Below, in pieces: positions 20,826 through 55,102 of a DNA stretch of 64,000 nt. Each line of letters opens with the position of its first letter. The first letter of the stretch is position 1. The stretch comes from Pocillopora damicornis (Eukaryota): contig NW_020845389.1 in NCBI RefSeq assembly GCF_003704095.1, positions 310,001 through 374,000 of the forward strand. Reading direction: 5' to 3'. A program made the position numbers and the translations under genes. Under the pieces are notes generated by a model. That model saw only the letters and a program-made list of their open reading frames with translations, was not told where the DNA came from and did no database searches.

Positions 20826-23510
20826 ATGGGGATAAGATTTTTCGTATTTGTTGTCCTTTTGGGACTAACACTTTCTACATTAGACGCCAAGTCTTTAAAA
20901 GGTAAGAGAATCTTTTCTAAAAATATTTGGTATTTTATATTCATCAGTTGATATCATAGAAAGTTTTCACAAATCTCTGAAATATCTTCTTTCCTCTCCT
21001 GAGAGCAAATAATTCTTTAAATACACTTCACCGTGTGCAAAGTGTGCAATCTAAACTTGAACCACTTTTGAAGGCCACGGTTGGATTAACTAAACAATTT
21101 AATATTTTATCGAATGCAATGTTTCCCTCTTAATCAACTTAATAGGAGGGGTTTTTCAGCGTTAATCTCTTCCCGATACTGCTATGAAATTTAACTGTAA
21201 TTTAGTGCGTAACACTGTGACAGTTTGAGAAAAATTAGGTTGAATCAAGCTACCACAACAAAACGTAAAACCATCTTAGCTACAACCATTTTAACTCCTT
21301 AAATTTGTGAACTGTTGAAGAAGAATACTTAAAACGAAGAATTTAAATTTGCATAGTTTCCGACTTTTCACTTTAGCTAAGTTTAGTTAAGCGGTTTGAT
21401 CTCTTCTCGAGTATCTGATGATCGGGGTAAAAACACACGTGAGAAGACTGTCTGTGATCTGCGTCATAATTGACTTTATGTGTAAGGTTACTTGATACTC
21501 ACAAAACTCTTCACACAATGGCTATCACAATTTCTCAGAAATGATTAGTGAAAGAGTCAAGTTATTTAAGGGAGTTAGGTATAAAAGTTCTTTTATACCG
21601 CTGACCTTCTTTTAATTTTAAATTTTTTTTTCTTCTCTCCCCTACAAAAGGACACAAGAAATCCAAGCACGGTAAGCTCCTTAAAGCTCTCATTCATACG
21701 GGGCCCGAGAAAGGTAATCAATGAATCGCTCATTTGCATGCCCATGTTTCAACTGAAATTTGCATGTGGAACGGACACCGTATGTAATGGCTTGTGCAGA
21801 TTTGCTATGGTTAACGTTACTAAGAAAAGATTAGAACTGCAATTCCCTAATTCCGCACTTACTTTAGACTGCTGAAGCTTGGAAGTGGTTCCAAAAGGTA
21901 CGGTGATGCTTCCGAAATTTAAAAATGAACATGACAATAATTTGAACACCTCACAAGATCACGAATGCACCTCTCAATCTTGATTGAAACGATTAAAGGC
22001 AGCCGAAACACTGAATTTAATGTTAGAAAAACCTCCTAGATCATGTTTGCTTTACTATGCCGTACACATATACGGTCAAAGAAACCAAGGTTACACTACT
22101 TTCTGCAAGAGCGGCTTCCTTGGGAAAATCGCGATAGTTTCTGGCTTTTTTCGTTGCTTGTCAGAGAAAGGCCGTGCAAAATGTTCTGATTTCCTCTTAA
22201 TTTGTCATAGACGAAGACACAAAGAAGAATGATGAACCTGCTGCCGAAGAAGCCTCAGGAAGTGCTGCTGGTAAGTGGGTAGCATGTGCACATTTAGGGC
22301 TTTAGCCTGTTAAGACGTTTTTTACATGTAGGCAACATACACACACACTTGAGGATAGCATCCGTGATCTGAAAATGGTCTCCACCAACACATTTTCGCC
22401 TAGAATCCAGACCTGGCGAGCGTGTCTTTGCTCATCCGCCATTGACTTGGAAAAATAAAACTCAAAACAAAGTTTGATAGGAAATAAAGCAATACTCAAT
22501 GCATCTGTCATATCTGCCTTTACTCCTCGCGGACTATTCGGGTTACGTTGTGTCAATTATCAAGCTCAAAACTTTTTCTCGTTCAAACATAATTATAGGT
22601 GCATCCGCAGCCGGAAGTGGAGAAGAATCCGGCTCCACCGAAGAAGGTATGCTTGTTTTATTTCTTGGAATATTGTCCAGATTACTTTGAGCTTTTTTGC
22701 CATAAATCACTCAAGGTAATTTGATAACCTCTATGTGGCAAAGCGTCAATTCTAGTTTGTCATAAGAGACAAAAACATGAAAGAGATTAAATTTCTAGCA
22801 GAGCGTTCGAGTAGACTTTAGGGTACTCTTGGCGTGTAAAGGGGATTCGAGTTTTTTTGTTTCTTTGATTCGAGGTTTTTGTTTTCCTTACTAAGAAGCA
22901 AACAAAGTGTTAATTATTGAAACGAAAAACTTAGACTGCTTAATTAGTTTTGCAATCAGAGGGAGTAATATACAACACTGTTACTATTTCGGCTGGTGCC
23001 TTATTGACATTCAGTTCACATTTCATTACTGCAGTAGGTGTTTTCTGTCCACAGCCTTTTGCACAGATTTAATTTCGTTTTCCTTATTCTGTTCTGACAG
23101 CTCCACCAACTGAAGGTGAAGGACCACCTCCTCTCGTAGTCCCCACCCCTGCCCCTGAACCCCGAATCTGCCCTGGCACCTGTCCCCAAGTGTGCGCACC
23201 AGCCTGTATGGAGAACTGTTGTCAAACACCCATGCCCCCACCCTGCACACCACCTGGTCCTTGCCCTGCTCCCTTGCCGGTACCAATGCCTGCTCCTTGT
23301 CCCTCAGTTTGTGCACCAATGAATCTTCCCTCATGTTGCCAAGCTCCACCCCCTCCACCCCCTCCCCCACCCCCACCTCCACCACCAGCCGGTCCCCCAG
23401 TTGTTCTTTGTGGAACTACCTGTGTTGATGGATGCGGACCGACTTGCCCACCACAATGCTGCAAGCACCACAAGAGAGGACAACTAAAGAGAACCTCGCA
23501 CAAACACTGA
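20826..23510 (+). CDS. Gene 7 isoform A: collagen-free polyproline/3-CRD protein with an acidic Ser-Gly segment (~204 aa)
   Basis: Exons 20826-20901 (MGIRFFVFVVLLGLTLSTLDAKSLK), 21651-21671 (GHKKSKH), 22211-22270 (DEDTKKNDEPAAEEASGSAA), 22599-22646 (GASAAGSGEESGSTEE) and 23101-23510 (CPGTCPQVCAPACMENCC; CPSVCAPMNLPSCC; polyPro; CGTTCVDGCGPTCPPQCC; basic tail). All introns are phase-1 GT-AG and the total length is divisible by 3. Confidence 0.82.
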
Positions 23511-24112
23511 GACTTAGTCAATCATCTCTCAGCTGTAAATAGAACTGTGATGGTACTCCTTGGATGTCCAAGGAATTACATAGCTGATTTAGAAATCATT
23601 CCAAGAATGCTATAGTTAATACAATAATTGAACTTTGATAATCAATGATTTTTCAACGAAATGTAATTTAAATTTAGATTGGTTTACGGTTAGGACAGAT
23701 TGATTTTATAATATGATTTGAAGGAATAAATTTGTTCTGATTAATGTTTTGAGACAAGTTTCTTGAGAATTCTCTGTTCCTCTTCTTGAACGTTTGGCAA
23801 GGCTTCCCATCTTTAACTTCTGGCTCAGTTTTCTATGCTTGCATGTTTGACAACAACTTATAGAAAGGAAAGAGGAAGCACATTTTGAAAAGCGAATGAC
23901 CTGATCATTATCGTCTGCCACCGAGTTAAAGCTCGGGAGCCTTGACTCTTTGTAATTTTCACTAAATTTTACACTTTTAGGTAGAATGTATCTACCGCAA
24001 GTGCGATCTCTTTCGACAAATTACTGTTTGGCAAAAAGAAATATAGGAAACATAAAGTCTAACTGTTGTCAAAAATGTAAGCTAATCCATTTTCTTTCCT
24101 TTCCTTTCGTAG

Positions 24113-53300: not shown

Positions 53301-55102
53301 GAAACTAATTATAAGCATTTATACATGGATGATCTCGCTCTTTTCTTGTTACACTCTACCTGGTAACTGTGAAAATCAAAATAATTCCAGAATTGATATT
53401 GAAATAAACTACGTTGCAAAATTCCTAACGCTTGCTAATCTGCGTAACCAAGTTGAAAGTAACCACCATTACTAATTTCGTAAAATGCCACCACTAAGTC
53501 AACATCATTAGAGCACAGACGTCTAAGTATAAAATTTAGCAGCAAACGCCGCAATCTATCTTCAATAGGAAAGACTGAACAAATCTCTCGGTTTCAAAAA
53601 ATGATCAGACATTAGAATACAAGCTTTTAGGCTATCAAGATTTTATTCAAATTAAAAAACCAAACGTCTTAGTAAACTTTTCTTTGCCTCTCCATGCCTT
53701 TCTAAACTTTCTTATTCCAGGTTTTCAAACTTTTTCCCCGAAGCCATATGTAGTGTGTTTTGTCATAAGACCAAGACGAGTCATTCCCATCAAAAAGCGT
53801 CCAGCACACCCAACAAAATCGCCAACAGGTACACCAATGCACACCTAACATGCATACTCATTTTTTTATGGTGGTGACGGCAGAGGTATATGGGGTAAGC
53901 TTTAGAATAAATTTGTTGCTGGTGAAGGACAAATCCTTTTTTATTAGATACTACTTTCACCTTGCTATTTGGGGGCAAGCACTCGGAGAGGGAAGAGTAT
54001 TTGCAGAAACTACCGTAAAGAAATTTCGTCCACTTTTCTCCGAGTGTCATGAAGCTGAGTCGCCCGACATGACTCGATACCTAAATCTATGCGCCCGGCC
54101 TGCAAACCATGCAGAATGGACTGGGCAAAGCGCTGCATTCAATTTTTAAGCCACAAATTATCCTCTTCTAGATAAAGATGGAAAAACCTAGAGGCAAAGT
54201 GCAATCAAAATTGCAATGTAACAAATCTACTTAATCTAAACTAAGGTCAGCTTTTATTCTGTATCTAAGAGCAGAAATCTAAATTAGAATAACCGCCTTG
54301 AAAAAAACTTGCCTCAAAGTGAACTCCTGAAACGGCGGTGAAATTGACACAGATCATTTGATTGGCAGATGAATCTGCAGAATCCGGAAGTGCTGCGGCA
54401 GAAAGCGGAAGTGGAGGTGAAGAGGAAGCAGCCCCTGAGAGTAAGACATATGTTATATAAGGTCGTCTCACTTGTTGAATTATTATGTGTTATTCGATAC
54501 CATTTCGGATTCACATAGTGATGATGTAGGGCGACCCTCTCCCATATGACCTTGTGATGGGATGTTTTGATGGAGTTTCCATCTAGCTTTGAATTTTTGC
54601 AAAATTTTAAAAAGAAACTGTTTGTCCACTAAAAAGTTATTACTTCAACTCTTGAAGTTCTTTAAAATGCACAAATCTAACTTAATTGCTTTCTCCTTGA
54701 TATACAGCTGAACCGATGTGTCCTCCACCATGCATCCGTCCTCCTGGCCCAGAGCACTGGGTACCGCGACCCCGCTACGAACCCGGCCCAGCCATTCCTC
54801 CCCCGCCACTTGAGCCACCCCCACCCCCTCCTCCATGCCCACCGACATGCATGCAAGTGTGCGCTCCTACCTGTGACCCAAGCTGCTGTGGAACACCCGT
54901 AGCCTTACCTCCACCCCCACCGATGCCAGCTTGCCAACCATCCTGCGCACCAACTTGTTGCCCAATTCCACCCCCACCACCTCCTCCACCACCGCCACCA
55001 CCACCACCCCCACCCCCACCACCAATGATTTGTCCTCCAACATGCCAGCCCAGCACCTGTGCCCCAGCCTGCCCTCCAATATGCTGCAAGAGAGGAGACT
55101 AA
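50379..55102 (+). CDS. Gene 11: collagen-free polyproline/CRD protein with an acidic Ser-Gly region (~240 aa), paralog of gene 7
   Basis: Exons 50379-50466 (MNIKFTSALLAALICLSFTSHLVRARSLK), 50799-50819 (DLASISK), 50959-51048 (acidic), 51554-51610 (DDNESAIKRGHLTDEYDYS), 54369-54440 (DESAESGSAAAESGSGGEEEAAPE) and 54708-55102 (CPPTCMQVCAPTCDPSCC; CQPSCAPTCC; polyPro; CPPTCQPSTCAPACPPICCKRGD*). All introns are phase 1. Confidence 0.8.
51392..51528. mobile_element. Palindromic MITE with ~55-bp TIRs (GGATCAAT...) and an 8-bp TSD
   Basis: Near-perfect inverted arms. GGCTAATC is duplicated at 51384-51391 and 51529-51536. GG termini with an 8-bp TSD resemble Merlin-type elements (inference). Confidence 0.9.

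What the first reader, a model, noticed from the sequence alone, without database searches (positions are those of the whole stretch)
22211..54440. Candidate core proteins for cnidocyst chondroitin: acidic Ser-Gly micro-exons joined to CRDs
Seen: EEASGSAAGASAAGSGEESGSTEE (gene 7, 22211-22646), DESAESGSAAAESGSGGEEE (gene 11, 54369-54440), EEDASGSGIEKDDG (gene 10, 45114-45179) and ESDEASGDE / EDSG (gene 8 tail). In gene 11 the motif lies downstream of the KR site, so it would stay on the CRD-bearing chain. Established: Ser-Gly flanked by acidic residues is the xylosyltransferase acceptor for glycosaminoglycans, and non-sulfated chondroitin is a scaffold of the forming nematocyst tubule in Hydra. 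Inference: these are CRD-proteoglycans able to tether chondroitin by disulfides to the minicollagen network. I do not know of a described core protein for this role.
Basis: partly seen in the sequence, partly recalled or inferred. Interest (0 to 1): 0.85.

Follow-up and report, generated by a model that had tools for sequence, protein, structure and literature searches.

The report
Conserved Ser-Gly exons in cnidocyst proteins
Neighbouring coral genes for stinging-capsule wall proteins carry tiny spliced-in acidic segments whose Ser-Gly residues are almost the only part unchanged between distant corals, so they are credible but unproven attachment sites for the capsule's chondroitin.

Summary
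The window is a coral cluster of + strand genes with minicollagen-type cysteine-rich domains (CRDs). All four acidic Ser-Gly stretches sit at the stated places.

- **Gene structure:** in genes 7, 10 and 11 they are phase 1-1 micro-exons with canonical splice sites.
- **Expression:** RNA contigs from four studies join the gene 11 micro-exon (54369-54440) into the mRNA, downstream of a Lys-Arg site in exon 4.
- **Conservation:** across five coral taxa, including Porites lobata, whose introns do not align, the only invariant residues of this exon are SGS, ESGSG and one Pro. In gene 10, SGSG is invariant at 42% overall identity, with synonymous codon changes.
- **Machinery:** the genome encodes xylosyltransferase, GlcAT-I-type and chondroitin-synthase-type enzymes.
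- **Literature:** I found no paper naming a core protein for nematocyst chondroitin.

The proteoglycan reading is therefore a good, testable hypothesis (about 0.4).

The tether idea fits genes 11 and 7 only. In genes 10 and 8 a basic site lies between the Ser-Gly motif and the CRDs.

The assembly gap lies in an intron of gene 9 and does not touch the finding. Gene 7 and gene 10 splicing has no RNA support here.

The parts
50379..50466 (+). Gene 11 exon 1: start codon, predicted signal peptide, start of the charged propeptide
   Evidence: RNA contigs begin near 50364 and splice out after 50466; translation
50799..50819 (+). Gene 11 exon 2, a 21-nt micro-exon in phase 1-1
   Evidence: Joints in 3-4 RNA runs
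50959..51048 (+). Gene 11 exon 3: Asp/Glu-rich propeptide exon without any SG
   Evidence: 0 SG in the propeptide
51554..51610 (+). Gene 11 exon 4: holds the Lys-Arg propeptide site, followed by a Tyr- and acid-rich stretch
   Evidence: a Lys-Arg is also in the Porites exon
54369..54440 (+). Gene 11 exon 5: acidic Ser-Gly micro-exon with three SG at 54383, 54404 and 54410
   Evidence: Joints 51607>54366 and 54440>54708 in RNA contigs; SGS and ESGSG invariant in 5 coral taxa
54708..55102 (+). Gene 11 last coding exon: CRD, proline-rich part, half CRD, polyproline, CRD, stop; poly(A) near 55320
20826..20901 (+). Gene 7 exon 1 (start codon, predicted signal peptide); model only
22211..22270 (+). 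Gene 7 acidic micro-exon 1 with SG at 22255; predicted
   Evidence: Canonical AG/GT, phase 1-1, open frame; no RNA laid here
22599..22646 (+). Gene 7 acidic micro-exon 2 with SG at 22616 and 22628; predicted
   Evidence: the last SGS uses other codons than the GGA AGT seen elsewhere
23101..23507 (+). Gene 7 last exon: CRD, proline-rich part, polyproline, CRD, stop
42931..43015 (+). Gene 10 exon 1 (predicted signal peptide); model only
44234..44335 (+). Gene 10 exon 2, basic and His-rich; conserved in Porites
45114..45179 (+). Gene 10 acidic micro-exon with SGSG (SG at 45125 and 45131)
   Evidence: the Porites counterpart L005:2675-2734 keeps the splice sites, the phase and SGSG
45472..45573 (+). 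Gene 10 exon 4: Glu/Arg-rich, ends with a Lys-Lys-Lys site that lies between the SG motif and the CRDs
46518..47206 (+). Gene 10 last exon: three canonical CRDs plus a Cys-rich C-terminal end, with Gln/Met/Pro-rich linkers (cnidoin-like)
   Evidence: 65.5% identical to Porites
30921..31319 (+). Gene 8 last ORF: a CRD, then Lys-Arg, then an acidic C-terminal tail with two isolated SG
   Evidence: SG not enriched (p = 0.10)
38994..39115 (.). Assembly gap inside an intron of gene 9; not part of the Ser-Gly feature

Best explanation
Genes 7 and 11 encode collagen-less cnidocyst wall proteins of the CRD-polyproline-CRD type, and gene 10 encodes a cnidoin-like CRD protein. A phase 1-1 micro-exon cassette inserts a short, disordered, acidic segment between the signal or propeptide part and the first cysteine cluster. 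Its conserved core is Ser-Gly-Ser, then a few residues, then Glu-Ser-Gly-Ser-Gly. The most likely function of that core is as an acceptor for xylosyltransferase in the secretory pathway. This would make the proteins, fully or part-time, core proteins for the non-sulfated chondroitin of the forming capsule. In gene 11, and probably gene 7, the glycan would stay on the mature chain, which is disulfide-linked into the minicollagen network. In gene 10 it would sit on a released pro-region. Shown: the exons, their splicing for gene 11, the conservation and the enzyme genes. Inferred: signal peptide cleavage, Lys-Arg processing, cnidocyte expression, xylosylation and the kind of glycan.
For: The gene 11 micro-exon is spliced into mRNA in 4 RNA runs from 4 studies. 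In alignment A3 of five coral taxa, all 8 columns of the two SG blocks are invariant, against 1 of 15 other columns (by hand about 2 in 100,000 if the invariant columns fell at random). Both the Ser and the following Gly are fixed, which is what xylosyltransferase needs and what a Golgi kinase site (S-x-E) does not. S-x-E is not conserved in A3. Codons vary synonymously in the second block and in the gene 10 SGSG, and gene 7 writes one SGS with other codons. The taxa are far apart: introns do not align and exons are about 75% identical. The Lys-Arg site lies upstream of the motif in both the window and Porites. The gene 11 propeptide is equally acidic but has no SG. The genome has Xylo_C, Glyco_transf_43 and CHGN genes. 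Published criteria for GAG sites are met (PMC2063922). Nematocyst tubule formation depends on a chondroitin matrix and is blocked by xyloside (PMC10014300; PMC9239447). No core protein turned up in four literature searches.
Against: There is no chemical evidence. Motif-only prediction is ambiguous (PMC8418075). Gene 11 does not fit the stringent nematode motif E/D-G/A-S-G; only one site each in genes 7 and 10 does, and Porites gene 10 has Leu at -1. Hydra CPP-1, the nearest characterised protein, lacks such a segment, runs as a discrete band and loses only 5-7 kDa on full deglycosylation (PMC6910907). A more distant homologue, L006, shows no acidic SG exon within 1 kb upstream of its CRD exon. 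Conservation is shown inside stony corals only. Cnidocyte expression was not tested here. The GGAAGTG words could also serve as splicing enhancers.
Confidence: 0.4

Rival explanations
1. The segment is a plain charged spacer or extended pro-region that carries no glycan. It keeps the neighbouring N-terminal cysteine cluster soluble and unreactive until the protein reaches the capsule vesicle, and it may be trimmed off.
For: Minicollagens have a charged propeptide before the N-terminal CRD that is thought to block early cross-linking (PMC4863159). Other genes of the cluster have long charged regions before the CRDs without any acid-flanked SG. In genes 10 and 8, basic sites separate the motif from the CRDs.
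Against: A spacer needs composition, not fixed residues. Here only the SG blocks are invariant, while the acidic residues around them change and shift by insertions and deletions. The true propeptide of gene 11 is acidic yet free of SG.
Confidence: 0.3
2. The serines are phosphorylated by a Golgi casein-kinase-type enzyme, giving a cation-binding patch in the ion-rich capsule.
For: Some serines lie in S-x-E or S-x-S contexts, and acidic Ser clusters in secreted proteins are common kinase targets (own knowledge).
Against: S-x-E is not kept across the five taxa, whereas the Gly after each Ser is. A kinase of this type has no need for that Gly.
Confidence: 0.12
3. The serines receive a different or abortive glycan: a xylose or short linkage stub only, heparan sulfate, or another O-glycan. 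The proteins would then be glycoproteins but not the chondroitin carriers.
For: Acceptor motifs can be occupied only at times or can carry heparan sulfate instead (PMC8418075). Hydra CPP-1 carries small N- and O-glycans.
Against: Chondroitin is the glycan reported for the developing capsule in the papers read here. Repeated SG with acidic clusters is a usual context for full chains (own knowledge).
Confidence: 0.1
4. The conservation is at the RNA level: purine-rich GGAAG words act as exonic splicing enhancers that such tiny exons need, and Ser-Gly is a by-product.
For: The first SGS block is identical at every nucleotide in five taxa. GGAAGTG recurs in the micro-exons of genes 7, 10 and 11.
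Against: Synonymous differences occur in the second block and in gene 10. One SGS of gene 7 is written TCC GGC TCC. The count of silent changes is not clearly below that in a neighbouring invariant peptide.
Confidence: 0.08

Closest known systems
Hydra CPP-1 (cnidarian proline-rich protein 1)
   Same: A capsule-wall protein built as CRD, polyproline rod, CRD, without a collagen helix. It is integrated by disulfides and is modified after translation (PMC6910907).
   Different: CPP-1 has a roughly 130-residue folded-looking N-terminal part and no acidic Ser-Gly segment. Its removable glycan mass is small. Sequence homology to genes 7 and 11 was not tested, because no reference was available for the Hydra sequence.
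Minicollagens
   Same: Signal peptide, charged propeptide ending in a basic pair, CX3C-type CRDs and polyproline. They sit in the same gene cluster (PMC4863159; PMC12549020).
   Different: Genes 7, 10 and 11 have no Gly-X-Y helix, and they have an extra Ser-Gly cassette that the canonical minicollagen genes of the window lack.
C. elegans chondroitin proteoglycans CPG-1 and CPG-2
   Same: Small secreted carriers of non-sulfated chondroitin that combine acid-flanked SG sites with six-cysteine modules binding a structural polymer. They were found only by proteomics and have no homologues elsewhere (PMC2063922).
   Different: There is no sequence relation, the cysteine module is a chitin-binding domain, and the glycan is proven there and not here.
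Decorin, biglycan and bikunin type N-terminal GAG sites
   Same: The layout is propeptide, then a short acidic SG site at the mature N-terminus, then a cysteine cluster (own knowledge).
   Different: The folds are unrelated. These are vertebrate sulfated chains on proven sites.
Nematogalectin and NOWA lectin models
   Same: These are the present explanations of how capsule chondroitin is joined to the minicollagen network (10.1101/2021.09.09.459669; PMC10014300).
   Different: They bind the glycan non-covalently. The reading here would add a covalent link through a CRD-bearing core protein.

Membership tests
Proteoglycan core protein (xylosyltransferase acceptor) | Enters the secretory pathway (signal peptide) | tested here: met
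   A hydrophobic N-terminal exon follows the start codon in genes 7, 10 and 11. This was judged by eye; no predictor was run.
Proteoglycan core protein (xylosyltransferase acceptor) | Ser followed by Gly with acidic residues within about eight residues | tested here: met
   criterion from PMC2063922.
Proteoglycan core protein (xylosyltransferase acceptor) | Stringent nematode chondroitin motif E/D-G/A-S-G | tested here: inconclusive
   Met by one site each in window genes 7 and 10. Not met in gene 11 or in Porites gene 10; motif from PMC8418075.
Proteoglycan core protein (xylosyltransferase acceptor) | Site conserved among orthologues | tested here: met
   A3 and A4, within stony corals only.
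Proteoglycan core protein (xylosyltransferase acceptor) | Xylose-linked glycosaminoglycan chain on the serine | not testable with these tools
   Needs chondroitinase shift and glycopeptide mass spectrometry.
Proteoglycan core protein (xylosyltransferase acceptor) | Biosynthetic enzymes present in the organism | tested here: met
   Xylo_C, CHGN and Glyco_transf_43 are all over the Pfam cut-off in the window's genome.
Minicollagen | CRD with the six-cysteine CX3C pattern | tested here: met
Minicollagen | Central Gly-X-Y collagen helix | tested here: not met
   No Gly-X-Y run in the models of genes 7, 10 and 11. It is present in other genes of the window.
CPP-1-like CRD-polyproline-CRD protein | Two CRD units flanking a continuous polyproline stretch | tested here: met
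   Genes 7 and 11.
CPP-1-like CRD-polyproline-CRD protein | Cnidocyte-specific expression and capsule-wall location | not tested
   The RNA runs are whole-tissue coral samples. No cell atlas was queried.

The most novel reading that the evidence does not exclude
These genes encode the first identified core proteins of cnidocyst chondroitin: CRD-proteoglycans. Their N-terminal Ser-Gly cassette carries the chain while their CRDs lock it covalently into the minicollagen wall (genes 11 and 7). A sister form (gene 10) primes chondroitin on a pro-region that is cut loose to build the provisional tubule scaffold.
Probability: 0.35. Interest if true: 0.8.

Novelty: new variant of a known kind. Interest (0 to 1): 0.6.

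Why it matters
Chondroitin has been known in forming nematocysts since 2007-2010. Xyloside experiments imply that its synthesis is primed on a xylosylated acceptor, which would normally be a protein. In the papers I could search, however, no carrier protein is named, and the link to the minicollagen network is explained only by lectins.

This cluster offers named, expressed candidates with a conserved acceptor-like motif, and the experiments that would settle the question are simple. If the reading is true, it gives a covalent route from glycan scaffold to collagen wall in one of the most extreme organelles known. It would also be an independent parallel to the nematode chondroitin proteoglycans. 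If false, the invariant SGS and ESGSG blocks in a disordered linker still need another reader enzyme or partner.

Tried and rejected
- **Protein searches.** The gene 7 CRD exon gave nothing. The CRD part of P0001 found only itself. The representative library gave three hits, of which two were useful. The P0002 search returned only Porites genomic read-through ORFs.
- **Own-genome searches** with the gene 11 micro-exon DNA and the CRD exon protein found only themselves, so I made no genome-wide count of such cassettes.
- **Metagenome scans.** The first scan was blank. The second, run with alignment A1, gave the seven coral contigs.
- **No signal from family or atlas tools.** Pfam finds nothing in the CRD exons, and the protein atlas gave no usable lead.
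- **Extra exons.** I found none in gene 7 intron 1. A full Porites gene 10 model was not completed.
- **Papers.** The key 2010 paper on nematocyst chondroitin is not held, so its content is cited only through later papers.
- I redid it from window coordinates. One search used coordinates off by one and is void.
- **Readings rejected.** The gap does not affect the finding. SG is not a mere by-product of composition. A kinase S-x-E site is not the conserved element.
- **Joined models.** Joined spliced models were translated only inside scripts. They were never sent to a search tool, and searches were made exon by exon by reference.
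Full report
**What the window is.** The window has about 39% G+C. A six-frame scan finds 27 matches to the minicollagen-type cysteine pattern, all on the + strand, spread from 12 kb to 62 kb. The open frames show canonical minicollagens with Gly-X-Y runs as well as collagen-less CRD proteins, each preceded by a short exon with a start codon and a hydrophobic stretch. 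Earlier notes of this scan on the same genome call it a coral. The RNA runs that hold the locus are labelled coral or marine metagenome. Pfam has no model for these exons.

**The observation.** Read at base level, the exons are:
- gene 7: 22211-22270 and 22599-22646
- gene 10: 45114-45179
- gene 11: 54369-54440

Each follows an AG and precedes a GT. Each has a length divisible by three and starts and ends in phase 1, the same phase in which the signal-peptide exons end and the CRD exons begin. Models built from these coordinates inside a script read open from start codon to stop. These joined models were not sent to any search tool; all searches used single exons by reference.

**RNA evidence.** Twenty-two public runs hold the gene 11 stretch, eleven of them recorded as RNA. 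Contigs of four RNA runs from four studies were laid on 50200-55500. They define six exons:
- 50379 (start codon)-50466
- 50799-50819
- 50959-51048
- 51554-51610
- 54369-54440
- 54708 onward, with a poly(A) tail near 55320

One 677-nt contig crosses all junctions. The product has 240 residues: a signal-like start, an Asp/Glu-rich propeptide that ends in Lys-Arg in exon 4, then a 38-residue acidic spacer that holds the Ser-Gly micro-exon, then the cysteine and proline part. No contig skips the micro-exon, although contigs cannot exclude a rare form. In one run a contig keeps the intron 54441-54707. The reads tool allowed one call, so genes 7 and 10 have no RNA support here.

**The assembly gap.** The N run at 38994-39115 lies between a donor after 38741 and an acceptor before 39289. 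The two flanking exons meet in phase 0 and rebuild one complete CRD. The gap is therefore intronic, belongs to gene 9, and has no bearing on the Ser-Gly elements. I did not try to fill it.

**Chance.** A strict scan looked for SG with at least three acidic and no basic residues within five positions. It gives four hits on the + strand, all in genes 7 and 11, one on the - strand, and 0.44 on average in shuffled sequence. Within each spacer, SG is more frequent than in shuffles of the same residues: 3 against 0.78 for gene 11, 3 against 0.78 for gene 7, and 2 against 0.16 for gene 10. The gene 8 tail does not stand out (2 against 0.59, p = 0.10). The gene 11 propeptide is just as acidic and has none.

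**Other corals.** A search of the representative library with the gene 11 CRD exon returned a 154-residue protein that its source names as Porites lobata. Its contig (L005) is syntenic with window genes 10, 11 and 12. Only exons align to the window, at 66-83% nucleotide identity apart from one 30-nt micro-exon match (97%); the introns do not align.

The Porites gene 11 counterpart has the Lys-Arg exon and a 66-nt Ser-Gly micro-exon at L005:13238-13303 with the same splice pattern. A second metagenome scan gave seven coral contigs. Four of them reach far enough upstream and carry the micro-exon: L008, the identical L009, L010 and L012.

In the protein alignment of the five distinct versions (A3), the invariant columns are SGS, ESGSG and one Pro. 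Every other column varies, and the exon length ranges from 63 to 72 nt. The taxa are well separated. Intron identity is near the random level except between L008 and L012, and a neighbouring invariant peptide shows 4-18% silent nucleotide change.

For gene 10, the Porites micro-exon at L005:2675-2734 keeps SGSG at 42% overall identity, with silent changes in one Ser and one Gly codon. A more distant homologue on a short contig (L006) has no such exon within 1 kb upstream of its CRD exon. That may mean absence or a longer intron.

**Where the motif would end up.**
- In gene 11 the motif lies after the Lys-Arg site. By analogy with minicollagen propeptides (PMC4863159) it should stay on the mature chain.
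- In gene 7 no basic pair lies between the motif and the first CRD.
- In gene 10 a run of three lysines lies between them.
- In gene 8 a Lys-Arg directly follows the last CRD, before the tail.

The covalent-tether idea therefore applies to genes 11 and 7. For gene 10 a glycan would sit on a part that may be released.

**Machinery and literature.** The window's genome has matches over the Pfam cut-off for the xylosyltransferase C-terminal domain, for the GlcAT-I family and for the chondroitin synthase family.

Published criteria for a chondroitin site are a signal peptide and a Ser followed by Gly with acidic residues nearby (PMC2063922). These are met. The stringent nematode motif E/D-G/A-S-G is met only by one site each in genes 7 and 10. 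The same review warns that motifs alone are ambiguous (PMC8418075).

Later papers describe capsule chondroitin as a matrix that stabilises the growing tube. In these papers it is linked to minicollagens by nematogalectin and engaged by the NOWA lectin domain. They also report that xyloside impedes tubule formation.

Four full-text searches and several targeted reads found no named core protein. The nearest thing is a tentacle transcript of a box jellyfish annotated by similarity as chondroitin proteoglycan 2 (PMC4989536).

Hydra CPP-1 shares the CRD-polyproline-CRD plan. It has no Ser-Gly segment and loses only 5-7 kDa on chemical deglycosylation.

**Reading.** A disordered acidic linker in which only Ser-Gly blocks are frozen points to a sequence-reading enzyme or partner. 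Fixation of the Gly after each Ser, together with flanking Glu, fits xylosyltransferase better than a Golgi kinase, whose S-x-E context is not kept. I put the glycosaminoglycan acceptor reading at about 0.4. The rivals are:
- a plain charged spacer: 0.3
- phosphorylation: 0.12
- another or abortive glycan: 0.1
- a purely RNA-level splicing constraint: 0.08

The recurring GGAAGTG word keeps the splicing reading alive, though synonymous variants argue against it as the sole cause.

**Limits.**
- Conservation is shown only in stony corals.
- Cnidocyte expression is inferred from the gene family.
- Signal peptides were judged by eye.
- The splicing of genes 7 and 10 rests on sequence logic and, for gene 10, on the Porites counterpart.
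- The 2010 primary paper could not be read.

Noticed in passing
window 51390-51530 (gene 11 intron 3): RNA contig depth is in the thousands, with many contigs that run on into unrelated sequence on both sides. This looks like a dispersed repeat transcribed from many loci, not part of gene 11.
   Followed up: no
window 51590-51610 and 54369-54375; L005 near 12419: Just after the Lys-Arg site and before the Ser-Gly block there are tyrosines embedded in Asp/Glu, and Porites keeps two tyrosines next to acidic residues. This is a tyrosine-sulfation-like context on the same mature N-terminus.
   Followed up: no
window 54441-54707: In run X1 a contig of the same depth as the exons runs unspliced through this intron, while three other runs show the spliced joint. 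This may be intron retention, pre-mRNA or an assembly path.
   Followed up: no
window 20826-55102: Every internal exon of genes 7, 10 and 11 is in phase 1-1, down to a 21-nt exon. This layout allows cassettes to be shuffled between genes of the cluster.
   Followed up: partly
window 29869-30228: An open frame between the gene 8 start and its CRD exons holds a run of nine histidines within a His-rich (HHxH-type) stretch. This recalls the histidine blocks noted elsewhere in this genome (s1-763573).
   Followed up: no
L005 13819-14265: The Porites lobata counterpart of the gene 11 CRD exon reads through two stops or frame changes, and the deposited protein model stops at 154 residues. This is either an assembly error in a polyproline run or a damaged copy.
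   Followed up: no
window 46518-47206: The gene 10 C-terminal linkers are rich in Met, Gln and Pro between CRDs, resembling the elastic part of Hydra cnidoin shown in the supplement of PMC6910907.
   Followed up: no
window 23956-24648: A further CRD-bearing open frame lies only about 450 bp after the gene 7 stop. I did not find its first exon.
   Followed up: no
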